Below the pieces are notes generated by a model. The model did no database searches. It was not told the origin of the DNA and worked only from the letters and a program-made list of their open reading frames with translations. From Macrostomum lignano (lineage: Eukaryota): a stretch of DNA of 64,000 nucleotides. Location of the stretch: the NCBI GenBank assembly GCA_002269645.1, contig NIVC01000175.1:372001-436000 (forward strand), written 5' to 3'. Shown here in pieces: positions 34,901-60,664 of the stretch (position 1 is its first letter; each line of letters opens with the position of its first letter). The position numbers and the translations under genes are program-made.

Positions 34901-35459
34901 AGCCGCCTCGGAGAGACCAGCTTTACCCGCAGCATTAGTAGGCCGCACCTGGTCCTTCTTCTCCTGTTGCTCCTGCGGTCGCATCTCCTCGTCTTCGGCG
35001 GCGATAGCGCTAGTATTGCGAATATTACGCAAAGCCTGCCTAGCCGGATCGTCTAATCTTGGCGTTACGGTGAGCACAGACTCCGGTAGAGAGGGCAGAA
35101 TTGGCTGCAAACTGAAGAACGGATCGTGCGGCATAGCGAAGACGCTTGGACGGAGCTGAGGCTGCGATTGCAGCATGGAACGGATGAAGGCGGCCACGAC
35201 CGGGTTCAAGCTGCTGGGAATCTGCGGCCGGATTGGAAGAAGGAGTGAAATTTTTAATTATTTTACACCGATATGTATCGAAAAAAAATGTAACAATTAA
35301 AATTTGTCAACTTGATAATAGCATGTACGCAATTTATGACGACGATGAATTCACTCAATGCCGTTGTACATCATGTGTAGTCTGGAAGTCTGGGTGTTTC
35401 TGTGTGTCCCTGTCTGTCTGTCTGTCTGACGGTCTGTCTGTCTGTCTGTCTGTCTGACG

Positions 35460-35491
<32 letters not shown>

Positions 35492-35510
35492 GCCTGCCTG
35501 CCTGCCTGCC

Positions 35511-35556
<46 letters not shown>

Positions 35557-35572
35557 GCTGTCTGTCTGCCTC

Positions 35573-35608
<36 letters not shown>

Positions 35609-35672
35609 GCTGTCTGTCTGTCTGTCTAGCTGTCTGTCTGCCTGTCTGTCTGTCTGCCTGTCTGTCTGCCTC

Positions 35673-35711
<39 letters not shown>

Positions 35712-35717
35712 GCCCGT

Positions 35718-35754
<37 letters not shown>

Positions 35755-35758
35755 CGAC

Positions 35759-35795
<37 letters not shown>

Positions 35796-37437
35796 GCCTA
35801 TCTGTATGTTTGTCTGTCTGTCTGTCTGTCTGCCTGCCTGCCTGTCTGTCTGTCTGGGAGCTCCCTGTCAGTATGTAAAATATAGAAAACTCATAATATA
35901 TTAGTCTCACCTTAAAATTATTATTCTTAATCCGAACGTAGGTCTCCTTGAGCGAAGGCGATTCAAATGGCGGCCTACCTACAACTAGGGTGTAGAGAAT
36001 GCAGCCCAGAGACCAGACGTCCACCTCAAAGCTGTGACCCTGCTTGTTAAGCACCTCCGGGGCCAGGTAATTAGGCGTGCCGCACATTGTCTTCTTCTGT
36101 TCGCCGTCTCTGTTGACCTGCGTAGCCAGGCCAAAGTCGCCGATTTTCACCTGGATTGGGATATTTTTAACAGGTTAGCGACTGCCGAAAAAAACTGTTT
36201 TCAGACGCCAGTAAATCTCTCCAACCTATTTCTAATCCTATTTTTCTAACACTGGTTCCACTACGGCAACCTTATTCCCCTTCACAATCAATCCATCATT
36301 AACTTATTACGTAATCAAAAAATACTTCTTTAACACCGACTCTACCTCTCAACCTACTTTCCCAACACCGACTCTACCTCTTAACCTACTTCCCGAACAG
36401 ACTCTACCTCAACCTACTTTTTAAACGGACTCTACCTTTCAACCTACTTTTTCAACACTGACTCTACCTCCTCAAACTACTTTTCCTAACACTTACTCTA
36501 TCTCTCAACCTACTTTCCCAACACTAAAAATCTACCTGTCAACCTTCTTCCCTAACACTTACTCCCTTCTTCTCCAACACTGGCCCTACTACTCAACCTT
36601 CTTCCCATAACACATACTTTACCTCTCAACCTACTTTCCCAACAAAAAGTCTACCTCTTAACCTACTTTTTAACACTGACAACACTGACCCTACTTCTCA
36701 ACCTACTTTTTAAACACTGATCCTACTACTCAACCTACTTCCCCTAACACTTACTTTACCTCTTAACCTACTTCTCTAAAATATAAAACCTACAACATAA
36801 CCTACTTTTCTCAAGCAACAGCACTGCATCACAATTTACTTTTCTACCATCTGAATATATACTCCTAACGCAACTTTCAATATTTCAACTTACTCACCCA
36901 TAGTTTAGAATTGAGAAACACGTTTCCCAGTTTGAGATCGCGGTGAATAATCTTGTTGCTATGCAGATACTGGCAGCCGCTGACAATCTGTCTCATAAAG
37001 TACTGAGCCTCAGGCACAGTGACCAGCTTTCGCCTACGATGCAGCTCCATCAGGGAACGCCTTGAGCACAGCTCCAACAAGATGTACATGTTTTCCTGAT
37101 CGGCAAAACTATCGTAGAATTTCACCAAATGTTCGTGCGACAATTTCCGATGAATCTCGATCTCCTGAATCATCTTCTCTTTCTGCGAGTCTTTAACTAG
37201 AAGCTTTTTGGACACGATCTTGCAAGCCAGGGTGCGGCAGTCGCTAGCATCTGAGCTAGTCACCTCGTAGCAGAAAGCGAAACCGCCTTTGCCAAGAAAT
37301 TTGCCGCAATTGTAAGAAATTCTACTTTGTGAGTTCACAATCACGGCCGGAATTGTGGGATTCTTAGCCCGCTGTGCTGCTGCGGCATCCGCATTAGCCG
37401 GTACTGCCTTTGATGTGATTGGCATTGCTGCTTTCAT
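31991..37437 (-). CDS. plk1: Polo-like kinase 1 (polo), 639 aa; exons 37437-36898, 36150-35911, 35221-34751, 33917-33495, 32236-31991
   Basis: Kinase motifs [41 protein letters not shown]; polo boxes [18 protein letters not shown] and [13 protein letters not shown]. All four GT-AG junctions are phase 0 and restore contiguous PLK1 sequence. The first acceptor base of exon 4 could be 33902 instead. Confidence 0.95.
32335..33440. repeat. Complex minisatellite in plk1 intron 4, rich in TGAGTCA, with a 188-bp higher-order period
   Basis: 24-bp units AATGTGTCACTAACTGAGTCACTG, then blocks recurring at 32870/33058/33246. Confidence 0.93.
33985..34655. repeat. Minisatellite in plk1 intron 3, ~18-19-bp unit ATCTTCACAAATCCCCC
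   Basis: Tandem repetition. Confidence 0.95.
35410..35856. repeat. (CTGT)n microsatellite in plk1 intron 2
   Basis: About 450 bp of CTGT with variants. Confidence 0.97.
36330..36820. repeat. Degenerate ~32-bp minisatellite in plk1 intron 1 (AACACTGACTCTACCTCTCAACCTACTTTTCC)
   Basis: Recurring CAACCTACTT and ACTCTACCT motifs. Confidence 0.85.
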
Positions 37438-47348: not shown

Positions 47349-49473
47349 TCATTTAGGATTTAGGAATTTGTGCTTGAGCAGCTCCGACGTGTCTGCTCGC
47401 TTCTTCGGATCCCTCACAATGCACCTTAGATAAAACTCCTTGAGGCCAACCGAGAAATTCCCTTCAATTTGAGGCATCTCCCTTTTCTTGTCGACCATCA
47501 CTAAGGGAATTCGAAAACCGGGCACGCTCGAATTCGGAGGCTTCATGTGCGTCATCTCGAACACAGTGCAGCCGAACGCCCACACGTCAGTCTTGATGGA
47601 GTAAGGGATCGATGTTCCGTCTTCGTCCATGAACAGCTCGGGAGCCATGAAGTGCCAGGTGCCTTTTGCCTGATTTCCGGTCGTAAGGCCGCAGGTGCCC
47701 ATAAATTCCTTGGCTAGACCGAAGTCAATTAGCTTGATGACGCCATCGTGGGTGAGCATGATGTTGGAACACTTTATGTCCCTGTGCAGGATAGGTCCCT
47801 GCGGCTGACAATGCAAGAAATTAAGACCGCTGCAAATCTGCAATGTTAACATGAGCATCGAATGATCAATTGGAGTAGCGAATTTTAAGTTCACATTCAG
47901 CGAATTTGAAATTTACCTGTCTTGAGAAATCCATCACGCCTGACTCTTCAATTGGTTTCTCGTTCTGTTTCATCAGATCAAGGAGGCTGAGGCCGGAGAT
48001 GAGCTCAGTGAATATGCAGAAACCGTCGGATGTGACTTCACACTTGAGGAACAGTACAATGTTGGGATGCTTGACTGTCTTGAGTATCTCGATGCCTCTC
48101 TGCTCCAGCTTTAATTCGTTCTTCTCTCTCCAGGCGTCGCCGCTAACTGGAATAACCTTGACGGCCACGGTCTGGTACCGGTCAGTGAGGGCTTTGAAGA
48201 CTTTGCTGAAACCGCCCGCGCCTAAGAGCTGCGGTTTGTCGTCCTGTTTCACGAAGCTCCAGGAAGTGAATCCCGGATCCAGCGGTTTTGAGACTCTGTG
48301 AATTATCAATAAAATTTTATACTTAAGAGACTAAAGAGAATTATGCAACAGTGTTAGGCTGATTCCTTTGGTTCCTGAGCACGGCACATTTGCACAAAGG
48401 GTATACGGAAGTTCTTACTGTGCATCGTATCTCATGTACAAGCCCTGGACCCTACTTGGAGATTGTTTATTAACCTAACAACGAGTAGCATCAAATTAAA
48501 CTCACAAGCTTAGCGAGCTTTCAAATGTGCTGGTATCACCTAGCGTTTGGGAAGCTGGTGGCTCCGGCTTCGGTTTAACGACAGGTTGCGGAGGCGTCGG
48601 TTGAGCAGCTGGTAGCTCAAACCTTGGTTTAACAGCTGGTTTTGGAGGCGTCGGTTGAGTAGCTGATGACTCAAACCTTGGTTGAACGGCTGGTTGCGGA
48701 GGCAATGTTTGAGCAGCTGGTGGCTCAAACCTTGGTTTCACGGCTGGTTGCGGAGGCAACGTTTGAGCAGCTGGTGGCTGGTCAGCAGGTGGCGGCGTGG
48801 GCAACGGACGGGCAGCGAGCTGCGGAGGCTGAAGCAGAGGAGCTCCCGGCTGCCACTTTTGGCTGGCAATCCACTCCCGCTTACTGCTCTTCCATGGATT
48901 ATTGCTGCCCTTCTCCACCCAGTCAATCAGTGTTTCACCTTTGTTATTTCTTAAGCTGAACATCTCGGAGCCGAGGTGACTAGCAAGAAACTGAAGCGAC
49001 TCCACCGGCTGCAGCATCGCGGCCCAATGGACGGCTGTGTTACCTTCATCGTCAGGAATTGTGAGGCAGTCAGTGCCAAGCCTCTCAACTAGCCACCGGA
49101 GCGATGCATTCGTTTTGGTATTCTTAGCAGCAAAATGAGCCGCTTTATTTCCCAACACTTCAAAGAAATTGAGGCCGAGAAATTCTCTGGAGAACTCCAA
49201 CCACGAGTCGTCTTTGAACCATGCCATCAGATGAATGGGAGTCCAACCGTTGCTGTTCCTGCAGGTCAGACAGCTCTCTCCAAGTTTTTCTGTCAGCGCC
49301 TTGAGGCACTCCAGGCTAACTGACCATCTAGCTACGTGATGGCTCACTGACTGCTTCAATCCGCGATACTTGAACTCAATGTTGCTTTCGAGTCGAGCGC
49401 ACAGGCGCTCCAGTTCCCTGCTGTTTTCAACTTCAAACGCTGCTCTTATCTTTCGTTTGGTAAAGTAGCTCAT
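47349..49473 (-). CDS. Ankyrin-repeat + proline-rich linker + STE11/MAP3K-like Ser/Thr kinase (gene A), 611 aa; exons 49473-48506, 48295-47917, 47837-47349
   Basis: Ankyrin motifs GWTPIHLMA and GNTAVHWAA; kinase motifs [38 protein letters not shown]. Intron 1 is phase 2 (TT|GTGAGT ... CACAG|A) and intron 2 is phase 0 (79 nt), giving one open frame. Confidence 0.88.
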
Positions 49474-50370: not shown

Positions 50371-52088
50371 ACAATAGATTTCAAATAATAAAAATTCTTA
50401 ATTATCTGAGCTGCTGCAGATGCAGTTCTCGAGACGACAGCACAGCTCTGAAACAATCAGCACTGGCATGAGCGCATCCGATTGTTCACACGCAGCCCAT
50501 TCTCACCATTTCTCCAGCAAGAATTTTCATTCATTTCACAATGTCTCAAAAAGCACTCCCAGTTCTCCATCGGCAGCTCAACCCACACAATCTCACTACA
50601 CACTGAGGCCATTCTCAACTGAGATCAACCGGCACCCCATTGGATAGGAGACAGCCAGCCAATCACAGCTCAGCCAGAGACAAGCACAGCTGACTTGACT
50701 CTGATTGGCTGGTCTGAGACTGCAGCTCTCAGGCCACCAGCATAAAGACGGTCTAACGAGCTGCCTCAACACTGGTGACGTAATAAGCCTGGCCTAAGCC
50801 TCACCTTGGATGACGTGCTGGGCGAGAGTCTGGAGTGAAAGGCTGCTGAGTCTCTCCGACGCTTGTCCGATTGTTGTGGTCGGGCCGAATGAATTCCTGC
50901 AACTGCAATTGAGACACTCAAGCTTTTTGTTCGCAACATACTACTGTTGCGCTTAAATGCAGCAGTAGCACCTGCAAAAATTATTCAAGTAGCAAAAGGT
51001 ATTAAGTAAAGAAATTGATCGTTGTTCAGCAGTAGACGATTTTGAAACGTCAATATGAGCCCTCGAGATAAGTTTGCCGACACAGACATGCTTACCCAAG
51101 CTGCACTGCCCTAAGAATGAGTACACTCCTATGCCTTCTTAAGAAGCTTCCTGGGGAGCCGTGAAACTGAAACACCCTGCAAGAAGTTTATCACAATAAA
51201 TAACTACTTGATCCAACCCAAACGCAGACTTCTGAGCATTGTTCTCTAGCTGCTCAGGTGTAATCATGTGCGCCCTCGATTAAATTTAGGAGTATCCTTT
51301 GGTAAGGAAAGCTTAAATATAGCTGGACTCTTTTTTATGGCTTGTGGCCACATGCCGGTATGTTGATGTGTCAGCAGCATATAGTACTCAGTGTCCCCAT
51401 GCAAATCACAAGATGTGATCTGTCAGCAGCATTAACGTCCGTGATTTTCTAACCCCACTGGACAAGCAGGTTATTATACAAATGCTGGCAATAGAAAATT
51501 GCTTCGAGTTGAATTTAACTCTACACGATGCTAATTGAACACACCATAGTGCTTAGGATGCATCCACGCCAACCAAACTCGAACAGAGCTCCATCAGGTG
51601 CACACTGATATTTCGATCCGCCACGCTCTGAAGGCCTCGTCCACCGAAATCTGAATTCTATACGGGATTTTTCGGGAAGTTTCTGTAATTCTCAGGATCT
51701 CTCTACTCCATTCAGTCTCGTATCTTTGAGTCCTGTAACAGCGTGTCGAAATCTGTGATTGTTTCTATTGATTTTCAAACTCGCGCGCACTCGTCATTCA
51801 TTGAAGGTTTCGACCGTAGAAGTTAATAATTGAATTTCCAAAGTCATGTATATAGGGGAGTTTGTTTTTATTGAAAGTTCCGCAAGTTTTAAGATTTTTC
51901 GGTGCATAGAAAGTGTTTGTTTGTTTAAATCAAGGACTTCTTAAAACGCAGGACGTTACAATCGCGAATTTTTTAAAGTTGGAGGTAAAATGGCGTAGTA
52001 AATCAGGCTTGTAGTTTTACGAGCTATTATTCAGCAATAAACAAAAATGTTCACCCTCTTTTTGGAAGAATTTCCTCCCTCAGTTGAG

Positions 52089-52150
52089 TGACGACAAATC
52101 AATTCAACAGTTCGACCTCAGACTAATGGTCAATGGGTAGTTGAAGGGTG
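52089..52150 (+). repeat. 62-bp direct repeat, copy 1 (copy 2 at 54857-54918)
   Basis: 58/62 identical to 54857-54918. Confidence 0.9.
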
Positions 52151-53534
52151 GGACGCTTGCTGAGAACAAGTCCATTTAACAAGAGAGTCCATGTTTGAGG
52201 AAGAAGCGATTTTAGAACAGTCTATTCACATGTTAGTTCACAAAATTCTGCCGAGAATAGAGTAGACATTTTGTCTGTTGCTGAGTATATACACATTTCC
52301 CTTGTTCCTTGTATATGTCTGTCTAGTCTTACTATGGTCATAATGGAACTCTATGGTCATAATAGCTCGTAGGCAAAAAATTATGAGCAAACAACCAAGC
52401 CTATAGTTTCCATGACAACAAGGAAAAAAATTGCAAACAGTACAAAACTATTATTGAGTTGATCAGAACATTCTCAGCTGAAACTTTGTTAAATCATCAG
52501 GGCTGTCAAATCTGCCCCTGAAAACTTGGTCATCTATGAAGCTGCAGCGAATTAGTGTACGAGCTAAAGCTAAGCTAAGTCTGGACAATTGCGGGCACCG
52601 AAAAGCGACCTGAAAAATCCCAGCTGCACTAGCCTCCCGCTCATCAGAAACTCGTTGTTTCAACAAGTGATTTTCAGTTCGAAAAGAAAGATGAATAAAA
52701 ACATTTTATTAAAAACTTAGATCAAAGAGCACTTCTATAAAGAGAGCAACAATATAACAATACGAGCGTAAACTGAACTTCAACAAAAGATTTTTACGAG
52801 CTACATAGGATATCGGATGGGATAAGAAACGCTCGTAGTGTTGTGCTACAGGCCGGATCGCAATTCTAGCTGTCCCAGAGGACGAGCCGTAGATGGCGTC
52901 AGTCAACTGGCCGGACTGACTTCGGACTCTGAGCAGGGGATCGCGTCAGGAGACTTAATCAGCCCGTCCCTATTGCACGGATTAATTCCCGCCAGTCCCT
53001 CAAATAAGAAAGACACGCGACTCACTCTGTTTCTTCGGGCAACAGCGGTGGCGGCAGCAGGTGTGACTTCTGTCAATTTCTGGCGAACGTTCAAGCACAG
53101 TCTGGCTTCTGAGTAAGTTCAGTTCAGTAAGTTTAGCATTGAAATAGCGTCTTGCACAACTCAACCAAGAAGATGCCTCCCCTACTGCCGCTCCTGCATT
53201 TATTTATATTTGTGCTAGCTGATTAAGCCCTGGGTATCGCCACCCCAGGCCCAGCTAGGCAAAATTACGAGTCTTATAAAAGTCTTACAAGGTCGTACAA
53301 AACCGGGGTCGCGATTGGAGGAGAAAAACACAAACCGATTGGCTGGACCGCCAACCAATCGCAGGGCAAGGGAGGGGCGCACTGGGGCCGCAGCCAGCCA
53401 AAACCGGCTGGCTCAACAGACAGTGGGGTTGGGTGCAGCTGGGGGGGGGGTCTGACGCAGACAGAATGGGTGGTTTGACGCGAGCAGAATGGGGGGCGGG
53501 TTTGCGCAGGAGGGCGGCTGGGAGGGGTGGGAGT

Positions 53535-54813
53535 CATGGATGAATAATATAACTGGATCGCCAGAAGCTCGATTTTTTGGTCCTAGCCATAGACAAGCAC
53601 CAGCATCACAAGAAGCTCAGAATGCCGTACTTTCACACATAGACAAATAGCCGCTGCAGAAGCTGCAAACCTTTATTTATGAAGCATTCTATTTTATGTC
53701 CAAGCACATGCTCGCAATATATGCAGGGCGGCAAAAGATGGCTTCGCGAGATGAATAAGGACGTCAGAATTTGTGCTGCAATCGGATGCCTATCCAAAAG
53801 TGGACAAGGCACGAAACCTGTCACCCTTTTTTCTTATCCAATCGGTGATCCGTATCGACTAGCGCAGTGGAACAGCAATGTGCAAGCAAAGTCACATTTC
53901 AAATTCGGAGCTCGTAAGTTCCTTTGTGAGCTGCACTTCGAACAACGAGACATGCAGGCTCATGGGAGGAGCAAGCGACTGATGACTGGCGCAGTTCCGA
54001 AGCTTGAGTGGACTAAGCTTGAACCGCAAGAGCTCACTGATTTCCACGATCCAAACTCTTATGCAAACGAAGCTACTGGAGACTGTGAGTTTGAGATGCC
54101 GATGCCTGTCAGTTGCAGCGCGGCAACCACACGCACATCAGTTGACCCACCACCAAACACCCGACAGCGCCTGTTGATGCGGCTAAAGCACAAGAAGCGC
54201 ACGATTAAGACTTTTGGTCCACGCGTTGCAAAATGGAAAAGTACCGAAGCGACCTTAAAACATCAATATTTTCTAGTGCAGGCGATTTCTAAGAAATATC
54301 TTTGCATTAGGTTGCGGCATGTACTTCGGAGGCTTAATGCTGTGAACACAACAACTGTGCGTCAGATGCTAACAAAAAAAATTATTTTCATGGGTCAGTG
54401 ACTTCAAATTAGCATTGTGCGGGTGACGCCTTGAATTTATTGTCTTTACTTGACTCTCATTTGTCTTGCGCGGTTTGCTTGCAACTCATTTGGCTGTTTG
54501 TTTTCGCCTTTTATTGTTTGTTTGTTTGCTGTCTGTCTACGTGCTTACTTGCCTACTTTCGTGTCTGTTATGTATTAATTCCTTTACATATTCGTTTTCT
54601 TCTTTGCTTGCCTTCACATTTGCAATATTTTCACTTATCCTACTAAATATACCTTATAAGGTACTTATAAATAAAAATTTGCAGCTTCTGCAGCGGCTAT
54701 TTGTCTACGTGTGAAAGTACGGCATTCTGAGCTTCTTGTGATGCTGGTGCTTGTCTATGGCAAGGACCAAAAAAATCGAGCTTCTGGCGATCCAGTTATA
54801 TTATTCATCCATG
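53535..54813 (+). mobile_element. Non-autonomous P-element-superfamily DNA transposon, 1,279 bp, with ~146-bp TIRs and an 8-bp TSD
   Basis: TSD GTGGGAGT at 53527-53534 and 54814-54821. TIRs 53535-53680 and 54667-54813 differ by 4 substitutions and 1 indel. The terminus CATGGATGAATAATATAA resembles the Drosophila P terminus CATGATGAAATAACATAA. Internal THAP ORF. Confidence 0.93.
53751..54401 (+). CDS. THAP zinc-finger protein, 216 aa from the ATG at 53751 (ORF open from 53679); truncated P-transposase N-terminus with no catalytic domain
   Basis: C2CH THAP signature CAAIGC...LFSYP...W...LCELHF...AVP at the N-terminus, then a basic helical segment; ends well short of a transposase core. Confidence 0.85.
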   Translation: MNKDVRICAAIGCLSKSGQGTKPVTLFSYPIGDPYRLAQWNSNVQAKSHFKFGARKFLCELHFEQRDMQAHGRSKRLMTGAVPKLEWTKLEPQELTDFHDPNSYANEATGDCEFEMPMPVSCSAATTRTSVDPPPNTRQRLLMRLKHKKRTIKTFGPRVAKWKSTEATLKHQYFLVQAISKKYLCIRLRHVLRRLNAVNTTTVRQMLTKKIIFMGQ

Positions 54814-54856
54814 GTGGGAGTGCAATGCCGGGCACACTTGACCGAGAGCCAGAGAT

Positions 54857-54918
54857 TGACGACAAATCAATTCAACAGTTCGACCATAGACAAATGGTCA
54901 ATGGGTGGTTGAAGGGTG
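54857..54918 (+). repeat. 62-bp direct repeat, copy 2
   Basis: 58/62 identical to 52089-52150. Confidence 0.9.
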
Positions 54919-55074: not shown

Positions 55075-55931
55075 TCATCCACCCGTTAGGAACTCGTGCT
55101 GAAGCAGTTCCTGTGCTAAGTTTCTCTCCTTGCGGTCCTTGGTGGTGCAGCGGCTGTAGAAATCCCTCAGCTGTGCGGACCGGCCGTCCGGCAGGGCGGG
55201 GGCGCCATTGTTTGCGAGGCTCCAAGCAACTTGAAAAATGTTTTGAGCGTCTCTGAACGGCCTCGCGCCAGACACCATCTGGAAGACCGAGCAGCCGAAC
55301 GCCCAGATGTCCGACTCTCTGCTGTACTGCATGCTGTCCGACTCTCCCGCTCCAAGCAGCTCTGGCGCCATGAAGTTCAGAGTGCCTTTGGGGGCTGCTT
55401 TGGAGTCCGAGATGTGGCTGACTGACTGCTCCAGCTTGATTGATAGGCCGAAGTCGATCAGCTTGATTCGCGAGTTGTCAGCACAAACAATTATGTTCGA
55501 GCAGTTGATGTCTCTGTGGATCACGGGCGGCTGCCGGCTGTGCAGGTAGAGCAGCGCGCGGCAGATCTGCGAGCGGTCGGTCAGTGAGCAGTCATCATTC
55601 ATGGGAACATGGAACAGGAGCATCGATAAACCTCTCCAAGCTTCGGCCGTCCAGCAGCTCCATGAACACAACAACTGTGGCGGGCTCCGGCTGAGCGATG
55701 TACAAGAACCTGACGATGTTGGGATGCAGCAGTCGGCACAGGTTTCTCTCGCTCTCAATAGCTCTGTGGATCTCTGTCCTCACAGAGGGCAGCTCATCAC
55801 CGAGCTGCACAGTCAGTTTGAGTGTCTTAGCAGCGCACCTGACGCCTGTGTCAGTGAGCACCTCGTAAACTTCGCCGAAGCCTCCCCTTCCGATGAGGCG
55901 AACTGCATCCCATCGCTCCAGATATGGGCAT
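55075..55931 (-). pseudogene. STE11/MAP3K-like kinase module (B); N-lobe from 55931 and C-lobe 55566-55075, with the alpha-E junction and donor apparently deleted; probably the last exons of the gene continuing at 56154-57998
   Basis: GRGGFGEV, CAAK, HPNIV, HRDINCSN, DFG, APE, DIWAFGC; close paralog of 58944-59918. The N-lobe frame stops at 55595 and is out of frame with the C-lobe. Confidence 0.75.
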
Positions 55932-56153
55932 CTACGAGCGTATGATGGGGTTCCGGACAACTTTTAAATTATAAAGAAACGCTAGATCGATCAGATTATC
56001 TTTTAAAAAGTTTTAGGAAGCCCCTCATTTAATAGATTTACACTACAAAACTTTAGTAGCTAGCCGCTTGTTTTAAAACATAGCTACTCGTAGTATAGCT
56101 AGAAGCAAACCAACTACCAGTATTTCGTCAATACTCCAAGCAGATCAACTTAC

Positions 56154-57998
56154 CCTTCTGTCGAGCGGTCCAGCAGCTGCACCAACTCTAAATTTTGATG
56201 TTGCTCCGCTAGCTGCGTACAAGTCAGACCTCGACCGTCTCGATGACTCGGATCTGCTCCTTTGAGTAACAAAATCTTTGCAGCAGTCAAATGACCCGCT
56301 TCGCACGCTCGTGACAGAGCGGTCCGACTCTGACTATCTACGGAATTCACTGATGCACCGAGATCCAACAGTTTCTCAATAAGTTCATGATAATTTCCAT
56401 CTGCTGCCAGCATGAGAGCAGTGGCTCCCGTGTTGTCTGGCAAATCGACATGCTCTCGGCTGAATGTCTCGTCATTGGTCAGTCTTACGGAAAGAGTGAT
56501 ATGCCGCTCAGAGATACAGAGACGGAGCATCTGCGTGATCTGAGCTGGCTGCATTCTAGACTGTACTGGAGACAGAGTGTCAGTTAAAAAAGAGTTCATG
56601 CCCTCAGTAGCCAGCGAGGCAAGGAAGCTCAGGATGGGGCCAGATTCTAAGAGCCAGTCAGGCTCGAGACCAAGAAAAGCAACGATGTTTTCTTGATGGA
56701 GACGAGAGCAGGCCATGACTGCGCATCTGCGACGAAAAAGTAGTTTTGATTCCGGGCTTTGAATGCACTTTAGAACCTTTTTGATAACATGCAACTTTTG
56801 AGACTCTTCAGAAGATTCCACTGTCTCCATGCAGAACTTGACGGTAAGATCTTGGTCTGAAACTTTTTGTACCAGAAATTCAACATCTTTCCATCGAATT
56901 TTGCCGGCAGCAGCTTTTGCTGCTCTAATACAGCAGTAGTCTTTCGTAACTTGGTCAGCGACTTCCTGCACAAGCAACATAGCAACTTCGAAATGACACT
57001 TTTTTGCCGCAAACTTCACTACTTTTTTGCAGCACTGATCTTTCACGGTTTGGTCCGGGATTTTCTCCAACAGAATTTTAACTACTTCCAGCTCATCTTT
57101 ACTTTCGTTTTGAGCAGGATTTGCTACCGCCGTGGACTGAGCACCTCCGGTTTTTTTAGCTATTGTATCTATCAAAAATGACACCACCTCCCACTGATTT
57201 GATTGGTCGCCAATAGCATCAGAGACTGCATCAGGCATATGTTGTGCAGTTAAAGGGTCATTTGATATCTTCAATTGAGTCAGTTGTTGTTCAGTATCGT
57301 CTGTCTTCTGTAAATAATCCAGTGTCTGCTGTCTCTGCTGCTGCATTGCACGGACATCGCACTGATTCCAGACTTGGCTCACTTGAGTAAATGTAGCCCG
57401 GTTTTCCGGGTTGACTTGAGCAGTCATGCGCATAATTTCTATGGCTTTGTCCCGCTCTTGAGATGGCTCAGGATTGCAACCAATGATCCTTCCTTGAAAG
57501 CTGTCAAAGTGTTTCCCCTCCAACACCATCCTTTTATAATCATCCTTGGCACCTTCATCACTGAAGCATTCTCTGACAGAAAACTCAGCAAGAACCTCAA
57601 CTATTAGGATTCCGTAGAGATATCGATCTCCATATTTATCGGGCTGTTTGCAAGTGTCAGCATATAATTCAGGCAATAGACGTTCGAGTCCTCTCTTCTT
57701 TTCGAATTCCCAGGTGTCAGCTGTCATCACGGAATGAGGAAGACTCTTTGCCAGTCCAAAATCAGCTATCTAAAAGAAGCAAAGAGCAGGCTGTTTAACT
57801 TGAAATATCAAATTACCTGTAAATCAATTTTCAAAGCTAAATTACCTTAGCATTTAAATGAAAATCAATTAGAACATTATCGGCCGACAAGTCTCTGTGA
57901 AGGATAATCTTCTCTTGGTTCTGTCCTTCTTGAAGGTACTGGAAACCATAGGAAACTTGAAGCATCCATAGGCTTTTGAGGCAAAGACGAGGCCTTTC
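56154..57998 (-). CDS. TKL-like (probably degenerate) kinase C-lobe + helical Cys-containing repeats + canonical ankyrin repeats (D); exons 57998-57846 and 57769-56154; 5' end unresolved
   Basis: HRDLSADN, NAK|IADFGLAK across a 76-nt phase-0 intron, and ankyrin repeats TGATALMLAA and QSRTALSRAC. Ends in the consensus donor GAAGG|GTAAGT (phase 2), which overlaps the apparent stop codon. Confidence 0.8.
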
Positions 57999-58943: not shown

Positions 58944-60664
58944 TCATTTTCTGTCGCCAAATAGTCCACCAAACTTTCTCTTTGAACTTTGCAACCTCTG
59001 ATTAGTCAGAAACTCGTGCTTCATCAGCTCCTGGGCTGGCAATCTCTTCTTGCATTTGTTGGCGGTGCATCGGCGGTAGAAATCCTTGAGCTCAGCTGAG
59101 CAGCCGTCAGGCAGAGTGGGTGCTCCACTGCTTCTCAGTCGCTCCGGCAGAGTCCAGCTGTTCTTGTGCTCAGCAAAAGGCCGCCCACCAGTGGCCATCT
59201 GGAAGACTGAGCAGCCGAACGCCCAGATGTCCGACTCTCGACTGTACTTTGGAGTGTCGGAATCGTTTGGAGCGAGCAACTCCGGTGCCATGAAACTCAA
59301 AGTGCCTTTTGGCGAAGCAGAGGACGCTGAGATGTGACTGACTGACTGCTCCAATGTGACTGACAAGCCAAAGTCGATTAGTTTAATGAGCATTGTGTTC
59401 GTCAGTACAATGATGTTGGCACAGTTGAGATCTCTGTGGATTACAGATGGATCTCGGCTGTGCATGTAGTGCAGAGCGTTGCAGATCTGCAATCATAGAA
59501 ATTACAGATTATTTAAGTTTATTGCAGTAATCAGATTGTGTCAGAAGTACTTTTTAGAAGTACCTGCTTGCTGAAATCTCGTATTTTGTTTTCATCCAGC
59601 GCTGTCTTATCGATAAAAGCTTCCAAGGTTTTTCCGTCCAGCAGCTCCATGAACACAACGACTGTGGCGGGCTCCGTCTGAGCGATGTACAAGAACTTGA
59701 CAATGTTGTCATGTTGCAGTTGACACAGGTTCTTCTCTCTTGAAACCACTCTTTCGATCTCATTGCTCACCAAGCCCTGTTCTGCACCGAGCTGCACAGG
59801 CAGTCTGAGTATCTTAGCAGCGCACGTGACGCCTCTGTCAGTGCGCACTTCGTGAACTTCGCCGAAGCCTCCCCTTCCGATGAGGCGAGCTGGATCCCAG
59901 CGCTCCCGAAATGGGCATCTATGATGGGGTTGAGACAATAAATTACGAATGAATGGGTATAAAACATGAACAAAAGGCAGCGCTTACTCGATAGCGACAG
60001 CTGTAGACAGTTGGGCAGCGAGCGACTGAGCTCCCTGCGGCTGCTGACGCCCGGCAATCTAGGCCTGCTTGCTCTCTCTTCTGTTTGTGTTGGTGTCTTT
60101 CTCAATCCAGTCAATAACTGTTTCGTCCTCGCAGTTCTTTAACTCAAAAAACTCCCATCCAAATTTGGCCAACAAGAACTTTAACGTATTTAGTGACTGA
60201 TACCTGGCAGAATAATGAATGGCCGAGTTTCCGAGTCTGTCAGTGGCGACAAAGTACTCCTTGCCAAGCTCCTTTGCTATCCACCTTAGCGACGAGCTGC
60301 TCGATTCGTTTGTAGCGGCATAGTGAACCACTGTCCCGCCCGAGTTCGCTGGCACCAAAAAGCACTCGCTGCCCAAAAAGTTTCGACAAAGCTCCATCCA
60401 AGTTTCGTCCTTATACCTCGCCGCCAAGTGCACAGGAGTTTCTCCTGTAACGTTTCTGCAAGCCAGACATTCATCTCCGAATTTGTCTACCAGCTTTCTG
60501 AGGCAGAGCAGATCAACAGGATGACTGGCCACGTGATGCGCTAATAAGGCATTCAGCGAGTATACCTGGAATTCGACGTTGCTATCGAGTGAATCGTATA
60601 AACTTAGCAATTCGTCGCTATCTTTCGCCACCAACGCCGATCGGAGCTTTGACTCAATCTGCAT
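58944..60664 (-). pseudogene. Ankyrin-repeat + STE11/MAP3K-like kinase (gene C) with one in-frame TAG at 60061-60059; exons 60664-59988, 59918-59564, 59486-58944
   Basis: Ankyrin domain is paralogous to gene A. Donor GA|GTAAGC and acceptor CATAG|A are phase 2; intron 2 is 77 nt, phase 0, at Q|IC as in gene A. Kinase motifs GRGGFG, HRDLNCAN, DFG, APE. The TAG aligns with a Trp of gene A. Confidence 0.8.

What the first reader, a model, noticed from the sequence alone, without database searches (positions are those of the whole stretch)
53527..54821. Young P-element-family transposon with unusually long TIRs and a Drosophila-like terminus
It has a perfect 8-bp TSD (GTGGGAGT), 146/147-bp TIRs about 96% identical, and a terminus CATGGATGAATAATATAA strikingly like the Drosophila P end CATGATGAAATAACATAA (seen; P terminus from established knowledge). 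An 8-bp TSD and a THAP domain define the P superfamily, but canonical P TIRs are only 31 bp, and long TIRs are typical of Galileo. An intact TSD, TIRs and ORF imply recent activity of a P family in a non-insect invertebrate, possibly usable as a transgenesis tool (inference).
Basis: partly seen in the sequence, partly recalled or inferred. Interest (0 to 1): 0.8.

Follow-up and report, generated by a model that had tools for sequence, protein, structure and literature searches.

The report
Internally deleted P-type transposon, THAP-only ORF
This is a real 1.3-kb cut-and-paste transposon of the P-element superfamily in an unidentified animal genome. It has lost the whole catalytic part of its transposase, so it is an ordinary non-autonomous copy and not a ready-made active element or tool.

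Summary
The element spans 53535-54813 (1,279 bp). It is flanked by a perfect 8-bp duplication, GTGGGAGT. Its terminal inverted repeats are 146/147 bp and 96.6% identical. Its ORF carries a complete THAP zinc finger.

The P-superfamily assignment now rests on protein evidence. The last 50 residues of the ORF are homologous to, and end at the same stop as, the C-terminus of a transposase family found in environmental and sequencing-run contigs (E=6e-10). That family carries the Pfam TNP-like RNase H C-terminal domain (E=2e-13).

The ORF is therefore THAP, a linker, and then the transposase tail. The helix-turn-helix, RNase H and GTP-binding domains are deleted. The copy is non-autonomous and resembles the Drosophila KP element in layout.

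Only the outer ~31 bp of the inverted repeats are conserved in three related families; positions 32-146 show no similarity. The functional end therefore has canonical P length, and the long repeat is a lineage-specific extension. The likeness to the Drosophila P terminus is measurable but modest.

Recent activity, copy number, an autonomous partner and the host species could not be tested. This is a new member of a known kind, of modest interest.

The parts
53527..53534 (.). Left copy of the 8-bp target site duplication, GTGGGAGT
   Evidence: Identical to 54814-54821 and directly abuts the 5' end of the element.
53535..53680 (+). 5' terminal inverted repeat, 146 bp
   Evidence: 96.6% identical to the reverse complement of 54667-54813.
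53535..53565 (+). Conserved terminal core of about 31 bp, CATGGATGAATAATATAACTGGATCGCCAGA. Inferred transposase recognition and cleavage end.
   Evidence: Conserved with the ends of L034 and L001 (z about 6, 0 of 2000 shuffles), while positions 32-146 are unrelated (z about 0). Modest likeness to the Drosophila P 31-bp repeat.
53588..53646 (+). Two subterminal CATAGACAA motifs (53588-53596 and 53638-53646), 54 and 104 bp from the 5' end. Candidate THAP-binding sites (inference only).
   Evidence: (repeat D1). Six matches in the window against 0.65 expected. Mirrored in the 3' arm.
53679..54401 (+). ORF of 240 aa including the stop codon. The likely start is the ATG at 53751, giving 216 aa. It is a THAP-linker-transposase-tail fusion.
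   Evidence: A THAP domain normally sits at the extreme N-terminus, which favours M25.
53772..54005 (+). THAP C2CH zinc-finger DNA-binding domain, residues 32-109
   Evidence: Pfam PF05485 E=4.7e-11. PDB THAP2 and THAP1 at E=1.7e-5 and 2.8e-5. All 8 signature residues present.
54006..54248 (+). Linker, residues 110-190: an EW/Pro-rich segment, then a short basic stretch (RQRLLMRLKHKKRTIKTF) that aligns with the start of the coiled coil in relatives. The deletion junction lies near residues 185-190.
   Evidence: Alignment A1; compared with L033 ORF1.
54249..54398 (+). C-terminal tail, residues 191-240. Homologous to the last 50 residues of P/THAP9-type transposases and ends ...KKIIFMGQ*.
   Evidence: BLASTP against L033 ORF2: E=6e-10, 38% identity, same stop position. 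52% identical to P0093/L001. The relatives carry THAP9_C (PF22824) and TNP-like_RNaseH_C (PF21789).
54402..54666 (+). T-rich (48% T) non-coding 3' segment, presumed 3' UTR. An AATAAA lies at 54670, at the inner edge of the 3' repeat.
   Evidence: No similarity to the 3' regions of relatives.
54667..54813 (-). 3' terminal inverted repeat, 147 bp. Carries the mirrored motifs TTGTCTACG (54701-54709) and TTGTCTATG (54751-54759).
54814..54821 (.). Right copy of the 8-bp target site duplication, GTGGGAGT

Best explanation
A 1,279-bp non-autonomous DNA transposon of the P superfamily (P-element/THAP9 type).

It arose from a full-length element by an internal deletion. The deletion removed the helix-turn-helix, split RNase H and GTP-binding domains. 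It joined the N-terminal THAP domain and the start of the coiled coil, in frame, to the last ~50 residues of the transposase.

- **Shown:** the insertion made an 8-bp staggered-cut duplication. Both ends carry the ~31-bp terminal core shared with related families. The ORF cannot catalyse transposition.
- **Inferred:** it was moved in trans by a full-length transposase of the same family. That transposase would recognise the 31-bp ends and bind subterminal sites through its THAP domain.
- **Inferred, less certain (about 35%):** the 216-aa THAP protein acts like the 207-aa Drosophila KP protein, occupying the element's subterminal sites and damping transposition or transcription. Otherwise the ORF is a neutral by-product of an in-frame deletion.
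- **Inferred:** repeat positions 32-146 are a lineage-specific duplication of one end.
For: - **Anatomy.** Perfect 8-bp TSD and 146/147-bp inverted repeats. Complete THAP domain.
- **A colinear relative.** Of 1.84 billion representative proteins, only one is colinear over both ends of the ORF: P0093, on the metagenome contig L001. Tblastn of the L001 ORF against the window gives E=6.6e-25 over 219 aa.
- **Link to a P-type transposase.**
  - The tail, residues 191-240, matches the end of L033 ORF2 at E=6e-10 and shares its stop position.
  - In L035, a less deleted relative of L033, the spliced peptide QDPIEHLFGEIRQKGGFNNNP... matches Pfam TNP-like_RNaseH_C PF21789 at E=2.2e-13, 50.4 bits against a cut-off of 24.
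  - The same peptide also matches THAP9_C at 21 bits against a cut-off of 24.
  - Its best PDB hit is Drosophila P transposase 6p5a_A residues 527-563.
  - L033 ORF2 aligns YIAGFIARRL...GGLLKPS with Drosophila YIAGYVIKKL...GGLIKPS at a pairwise E=4e-4; hhalign gives 0.0018.
- **Independent deletions.** The breakpoints differ in the window copy, L001 and L033. This is the usual fate of P elements (PMC7776569).
- **Conserved ends.** The terminal 31 bp are conserved with L034, whose 5' end lies 233 bp upstream of its THAP start codon (216 bp here). They are also conserved with the L001 3' end.
- **Known precedent.** Small P elements that encode THAP-only repressors are documented, the KP protein being the example (PMC7776569).
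Against: - No autonomous copy, no second copy and no empty site were seen, so mobility and the trans-mobilisation partner are inferred.
- The link from the 50-aa tail to a solved or curated P transposase is transitive. Alone, the tail gives no Pfam or PDB hit, and hhalign against the Drosophila C-terminus gives E=0.29. The THAP9_C hits are just below Pfam's cut-off in my own scans.
- The coiled coil needed for KP-like dimerisation is truncated to about 18 residues.
- The structure model was uninformative (pLDDT 36).
- The candidate THAP-binding motif is a guess.
Confidence: 0.85

Rival explanations
1. The element is a dead, neutrally decaying P-derived relic. The ORF is open and in frame only by chance and has no function.
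For: One in three random deletions is in frame. One of the three related deletion derivatives, L033, is frameshifted. The coiled coil is truncated. The different breakpoints show that no short architecture has been inherited.
Against: All eight THAP signature residues are intact. The 723-bp ORF carries no frameshift, although the repeat arms show one indel in 146 bp. The in-frame THAP-tail layout recurs in L001.
Confidence: 0.5
2. It belongs to a Galileo-like or foldback-like branch of the P superfamily, where long inverted repeats are the ancestral design, not to the P-element/THAP9 branch.
For: The repeats are 146 bp, far longer than the 13-31 bp of P, AgaP and Pdre elements (PMC4168063).
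Against: The TSD is 8 bp, whereas Galileo usually makes 7 bp (PMC4168063). Only the outer 31 bp are conserved among related families. The relatives' transposase has an intron, whereas Galileo and 1360 lack introns (PMC3698922). The terminus resembles the Drosophila P terminus.
Confidence: 0.08
3. It is a non-autonomous hAT element, or a member of another superfamily that also makes 8-bp TSDs, and has captured a THAP exon.
For: hAT elements also make 8-bp TSDs (established knowledge). THAP domains occur in many host genes.
Against: The terminus CATGG does not fit the hAT YARNG end (established knowledge). Pfam finds no BED or hAT dimerisation domain. The ORF tail is the end of a P-type transposase. 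The same terminus lies upstream of THAP ORFs in the unrelated contig L034.
Confidence: 0.03
4. It is a host THAP gene, possibly domesticated, that happens to lie between inverted repeats and is not a mobile element.
For: It is single-copy in the window and has an intact short ORF.
Against: The perfect TSD abuts the repeat ends. The terminal core is shared with other loci. There are no introns, and the layout matches a deletion derivative.
Confidence: 0.02

Closest known systems
Drosophila melanogaster P element, and specifically its internally deleted KP derivative (207-aa THAP repressor)
   Same: - 8-bp TSD.
- A terminal core of about 31 bp that begins CATG and has a similar sequence.
- N-terminal THAP domain.
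- An internal deletion that keeps the DNA-binding N-terminus in a protein of about 210 aa (PMC7776569).
   Different: - The inverted repeats extend to 146 bp, against 31 bp.
- The deletion fuses THAP in frame to the last 50 residues of the C-terminal domain.
- The leucine zipper is mostly lost.
- No nucleotide similarity to the P element beyond the terminus.
- The host is an unidentified metazoan.
- Repressor activity has not been tested.
Zebrafish Pdre/THAP9 elements and other non-insect P-like elements (Ciona, Trichomonas)
   Same: - P-type transposase relatives outside insects.
- 8-bp TSD.
- Internally deleted copies occur alongside full-length ones (PMC10983969, PMC3698922).
   Different: - Pdre2 has 13-bp terminal repeats (CATACCTGTCAAC) and 12-bp subterminal repeats about 400 bp inside.
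- The ends share no sequence with this element beyond CAT.
Environmental relatives found here: L001 (JGI metagenome 3300040778), L034 (Tara Oceans run ERR1726684), L033/L035 (SRR7599113, ERZ27295729)
   Same: - The same THAP subtype, with ...GAVP..EW after the domain.
- The same C-terminal ending, KK[IV]IF[LM]GQ*.
- L001 and L034 share the terminal core CAWGGATGA-N9-(C/G)(T/C)GGATNGC.
- The 5' leader length is similar.
   Different: - Protein identity is only 33-38%.
- The DNA is unrelated outside the terminal 31 bp.
- The deletion breakpoints differ.
- L035 keeps part of the RNase H domain and an intron.
Galileo (P superfamily, Drosophila)
   Same: - Long inverted repeats.
- THAP-bearing transposase.
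   Different: - Galileo repeats run from hundreds of bp to more than 1 kb.
- Its TSD is typically 7 bp.
- It has no introns (PMC4168063, PMC3698922).

Membership tests
P superfamily (P element / THAP9 type) | Target site duplication of 8 bp (7-9 bp across the superfamily) | tested here: met
   GTGGGAGT on both sides, 8 of 8 bases identical. Only one copy was available.
P superfamily (P element / THAP9 type) | Terminal inverted repeats with a conserved terminal segment of about 31 bp | tested here: met
   146/147-bp repeats. Only positions 1-31 are conserved with L034 and L001. The likeness to the Drosophila P repeat gives p about 7e-4 by shuffling.
P superfamily (P element / THAP9 type) | N-terminal THAP C2CH domain in the encoded protein | tested here: met
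   PF05485 at E=4.7e-11. C32, C37, P54, W64, C83, H86, F87 and P107 are all present.
P superfamily (P element / THAP9 type) | Coding remnants homologous to a P-type transposase (C-terminal domain) | tested here: met
   The link is transitive. The tail matches L033 ORF2 at E=6e-10 with the same stop position. That family carries PF21789 at E=2.2e-13 and PF22824 at 21-22 bits. Its best PDB hit is the Drosophila P transposase. The tail alone gives no direct hit.
P superfamily (P element / THAP9 type) | Catalytic split RNase H domain with a GTP-binding insertion domain and an HTH (needed for an autonomous element) | tested here: not met
   Pfam finds only THAP in the 240-aa ORF, and there is no room for these domains. 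This copy is therefore non-autonomous. That does not exclude it from the superfamily.
P superfamily (P element / THAP9 type) | A full-length autonomous partner with the same ends in the same genome | not testable with these tools
   Only 64 kb of the host genome is available. There is no other copy in the window. The metagenome, viral and prokaryote-genome collections gave only chance matches.
KP-type repressor-encoding deletion derivative | An internal deletion that keeps the THAP DNA-binding domain in a short ORF | tested here: met
KP-type repressor-encoding deletion derivative | A retained dimerisation (leucine zipper) region | tested here: inconclusive
   Only about 18 basic residues align with the start of the coiled coil in relatives. 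The structure model was too poor to judge.
KP-type repressor-encoding deletion derivative | Binds the element's subterminal sites and represses transposition | not testable with these tools
   The candidate CATAGACAA sites are only a hypothesis.
Galileo | 7-bp TSD and repeats of several hundred bp or more | tested here: not met
   The TSD is 8 bp and the repeats are 146 bp. Reference values are from PMC4168063.
hAT superfamily | 8-bp TSD together with a YARNG terminus and a BED or hAT-dimerisation transposase | tested here: not met
   The TSD length fits. The terminus is CATGG, Pfam finds no hAT or BED domain, and the ORF tail is P-type.

The most novel reading that the evidence does not exclude
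P-type transposons in several unrelated, probably marine, animal lineages may repeatedly give rise to short elements that keep an in-frame THAP-plus-C-terminal-tail protein. Such a protein could act as a self-encoded, KP-like regulator. Their ~31-bp end may be conserved deeply enough, back to the Drosophila P terminus, that heterologous P or THAP9 transposases could recognise it. There is a precedent: Drosophila transposase excises zebrafish Pdre2.
Probability: 0.15. Interest if true: 0.5.

Novelty: new member of a known kind. Interest (0 to 1): 0.3.

Why it matters
It adds a clearly delimited P-superfamily element from an unidentified non-model animal, with a few environmental relatives. It shows that the ~31-bp P-type end persists across families whose remaining DNA has diverged beyond recognition.

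If a full-length partner exists in the host genome, the family could be tested for activity. The short THAP protein would then be a natural candidate for a transposon-encoded repressor outside Drosophila.

By itself, this copy is routine transposon annotation.

Tried and rejected
**Searches that found nothing useful**
- The word-indexed protein search with the ORF found nothing.
- Exact-product look-ups of the ORF and of a neighbouring GPCR gene found nothing on record.
- The protein-pattern scan and the terminus-pattern scan of the metagenome contigs gave nothing or 3 hits. The terminus-pattern scan gave 28 hits in viral contigs and 2 in prokaryote genomes.
- None of the metagenome or viral hits has extended similarity to the element. 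The two prokaryote-genome hits were not examined further; their number is about what chance predicts, and I counted them as chance matches.

**Direct tests of the 52-aa tail alone**
- Pfam and PDB gave no hit.
- hhalign against the Drosophila C-terminus picked the expected register (YLCIRLRHVLRRLN with YFKIRIYFRIKYFN), but at E=0.29.
- The precomputed THAP9_C label on P0093 could not be reproduced on P0093 itself. It was reproduced only near threshold on L033 and L035.

**Other dead ends**
- The single-sequence AlphaFold2 model of the ORF had pLDDT 36 and was unusable, so no fold search was run.
- Intron hypothesis: GTCAGT at the stop codon and TTTGCAG at 54677-54683 look like splice sites. 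I rejected this because three related proteins end at the same ...GQ*.
- A candidate 3' end in L035 (rc CATGATGAGAAAAAGTC, position 1423) could not be verified against the L033 5' region.
- No paralogous empty site was found among the tandem kinase genes.
- No tRNA or Rfam family was found in the window.
- Host identification failed. The best named hits to the polo-like kinase exon reach only 50-58% identity and come from rotifer, nematode, tick and ostracod proteins.
Full report
**1.

The sequence at 53527-54821 is as described. An 8-bp direct repeat, GTGGGAGT, lies at 53527-53534 and 54814-54821. It flanks a 1,279-bp element whose ends are inverted repeats of 146 and 147 bp. The outer 44 bp of the arms are perfect. 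Overall the arms differ by one 1-bp indel and two substitutions, plus two mismatches at the inner edge, which is 96.6% identity by BLAST.

The terminal 28-mer occurs only at these two places in the window, and shuffles expect no match. A looser terminus pattern also finds nothing else. The element is single-copy in the 64 kb.

**2. The ORF**

The ORF at 53679-54401 (+) is 240 aa. It matches Pfam THAP at E=4.7e-11 over residues 32-109, and the solved THAP2 and THAP1 domains. The C2CH ligands and the four further invariant residues are all present: C32, C37, P54, W64, C83, H86, F87, P107. That signature is as defined in PMC4168063.

THAP domains sit at the extreme N-terminus, so the ATG at 53751 (MNKDVRICAAIGC..., 216 aa) is the more likely start. 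The first ATG, at 53679, lies on the inner edge of the 5' repeat.

**3. What the rest of the ORF is**

A full HMMER scan of 1.84 billion representative proteins gave only 27 hits, all through the THAP domain. One of them, P0093, also matches residues 192-240.

P0093 lies on a 1,089-bp JGI metagenome contig, L001. The L001 ORF is colinear with the window ORF at 33% identity over 219 aa (tblastn E=6.6e-25). Both proteins end ...KKIIF[ML]GQ*.

A second relative, L033 (Logan assembly of SRR7599113), has a THAP ORF followed by a second ORF. The last 50 residues of that second ORF match the window tail at E=6e-10 and share its stop position.

A less deleted copy of the same family is L035 (ENA ERZ27295729). 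It still carries an upstream exon, QDPIEHLFGEIRQKGGFNNNPNAAQFQ, followed by an intron.
- The spliced peptide matches Pfam TNP-like_RNaseH_C (PF21789) at E=2.2e-13, 50.4 bits against a cut-off of 24.
- It also matches THAP9_C (PF22824) at 21 bits against a cut-off of 24.
- Its best PDB match is Drosophila P transposase 6p5a_A residues 527-563, QDIVEHFFGSMRSRGGQFDHPTPLQF.
- The YIAGF...GGLLKPS block of L033 ORF2 aligns with the Drosophila C-terminal domain at a pairwise E=4e-4. The Drosophila sequence was verified. hhalign gives 0.0018.

So the window ORF is the N-terminus of a P/THAP9-type transposase (THAP plus the first turns of the coiled coil) joined in frame to that transposase's last ~50 residues. 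The helix-turn-helix, RNase H and GTP-binding domains are absent. The six-domain layout is described in PMC7776569.

One caveat applies. The tail by itself gives no Pfam or PDB hit, and hhalign against the Drosophila tail gives only E=0.29. The link to curated P transposases is therefore transitive.

**4. Independent deletions**

The three short relatives have different breakpoints.
- P0093 (L001) jumps from just after the THAP domain to ...QIKDRGGLLAPS..., and keeps about 110 residues of the C-terminal domain.
- The window copy keeps more of the N-terminal part, but only 50 C-terminal residues.
- L033 has a large deletion and also a 50-bp deletion relative to L035 that shifts the frame.

These are separate deletion derivatives of separate parents, which is the usual fate of P elements (PMC7776569). 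The shared short layout is therefore not inherited. The protein conservation between them mostly reflects selection on the full-length parents.

**5. The ends**

L034 is a Tara Oceans contig. Its THAP ORF, P0103, is 36% identical to the window ORF in the THAP region. It carries CATGGATGAAGGAAATAAGCGGATAGC 233 bp upstream of its start codon. In the window, the 5' end lies 216 bp upstream of the ATG at 53751.

L001 ends ...CTAGCAATCCAGTGTATTCTATCATCCTTG about 380 bp after its stop codon, and the sequence beyond that point is an unrelated tandem repeat.

Positions 1-31 of these ends are significantly alike in all three pairwise comparisons (z = 4.7-6.1, 0 of 2000 shuffles). Positions 32-146 show no similarity (z about 0). 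The constrained end is therefore about 31 bp, the same length as the canonical P repeat. The extra 115 bp of inverted repeat in the window copy is a lineage-specific extension, most simply a duplication of one end.

The likeness to the Drosophila terminus (CATG-ATGAAATAACATAA against CATGGATGA-ATAATATAA) is reached by 0.065% of shuffles, and by 4 other window 31-mers out of 127,938. The L001 end is less similar to the Drosophila end (p=0.07). I read this as a probable but weak trace of common ancestry of P termini.

**6. Subterminal motif**

Each arm carries two C(A/G)TAGACAA motifs, 54-55 and 104-105 bp from the tip. In Drosophila the THAP-binding sites lie just inside the 31-bp repeats (PMC7776569). 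By position, these motifs are candidates for THAP binding. This is a hypothesis only, and the relatives do not share the motif.

**7. Mechanism**

- **Shown:** cut-and-paste anatomy with an 8-bp staggered target cut, and no catalytic capacity in this copy.
- **Inferred:** mobilisation in trans by a full-length family member.
- **Possible (about 35%):** the 216-aa THAP protein acts like the 207-aa KP repressor (PMC7776569).
- **The alternative:** the ORF is a neutral in-frame accident. This is at least as likely. The coiled coil is truncated, and one of the three relatives is frameshifted.

**8. Age**

Nothing here demonstrates youth. If the 3.4% difference between the arms arose in place, 0.27 changes are expected in the TSD pair, so a perfect TSD is unsurprising. 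On the other hand, one indel per 146 bp in the arms would predict frameshifts in a 723-bp ORF. The open ORF therefore hints either that the arm differences predate the insertion or that the ORF is under selection. With one copy, this cannot be resolved.

**9. Context**

The element lies 253 bp downstream of the stop codon of the middle gene of three tandem ankyrin-repeat/protein-kinase genes on the minus strand. It is about 4 kb upstream of the next of these genes.

The window is metazoan. It carries a rhodopsin-type GPCR, an SLC6 transporter and a polo-like kinase, and it is rich in minisatellites. The host could not be identified.

**10. Comparison and novelty**

P-like elements are already known from protozoa, dipterans, Ciona and vertebrates (PMC3698922, PMC10983969). 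Terminal repeat length varies widely in the superfamily:
- 3 bp plus sub-repeats in the repleta-group Drosophila;
- 13 bp in zebrafish;
- 27-31 bp in Drosophila and Anopheles;
- more than 1 kb in Galileo.

THAP-only deletion derivatives are classic.

This is a new member of a known kind. The useful additions are the protein-level proof of P ancestry, the finding that only a 31-bp core of the long repeat is conserved, and a small set of environmental relatives.

Noticed in passing
window 52086-52150 and 54854-54918: A 65-bp segment 33 bp to the right of the element has a 92%-identical copy 1.4 kb to its left. It is a short dispersed repeat or a conserved intergenic element, and it is unrelated to the transposon. 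The CATAGACAA inside the right-hand copy is not shared by the left-hand copy.
   Followed up: partly
window 47349-49473, 55075-57730, 58944-60664 (minus strand): Three tandem paralogous genes, each encoding ankyrin repeats followed by a protein kinase domain (Pfam). Their kinase exons are about 71% identical at the DNA level.
   Followed up: partly
window 800-37000: An unusually dense set of minisatellites and microsatellites, with 39 TRF rows scoring at least 200. Examples are (ACAG)n at 1864-2424, (CTGT)n at 35410-35856 inside the polo-like kinase gene region, and arrays with periods of 21-41 bp. Several of them create long spurious ORFs.
   Followed up: partly
window 53672-53682 and 54665-54675: The innermost part of the inverted repeat reads TTTATTTAT at the 5' arm, just upstream of the coding region. 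Its mirror, ATAAATAAA, at the 3' arm contains an AATAAA signal at 54670. The same palindromic stretch could serve as an A/T-rich promoter element at one end and a poly(A) signal at the other. This is speculative.
   Followed up: no
L035 1378-1423 (ENA ERZ27295729): About 330 bp after the transposase stop codon, the sequence ...TTTTTCTCATCATG reads, on the other strand, CATGATGAGAAAAAGTC. It shares its first 8 bases with the Drosophila P terminus and may be the 3' end of that family. This could not be verified.
   Followed up: partly
L035 1-28: The public contig begins with a sequencing adapter-like sequence (TGGGCTCGGAGATGTGTATAAGAGACAG), so its first bases are not biological.
   Followed up: no
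window 53400-53534: The left flank of the insertion is a G-rich tract (GGGGGGGGGTCTGACGCAGACAGAATGGGTGG... with a 23-bp tandem duplication at 53445-53490). The target octamer GTGGGAGT is part of it.
   Followed up: no
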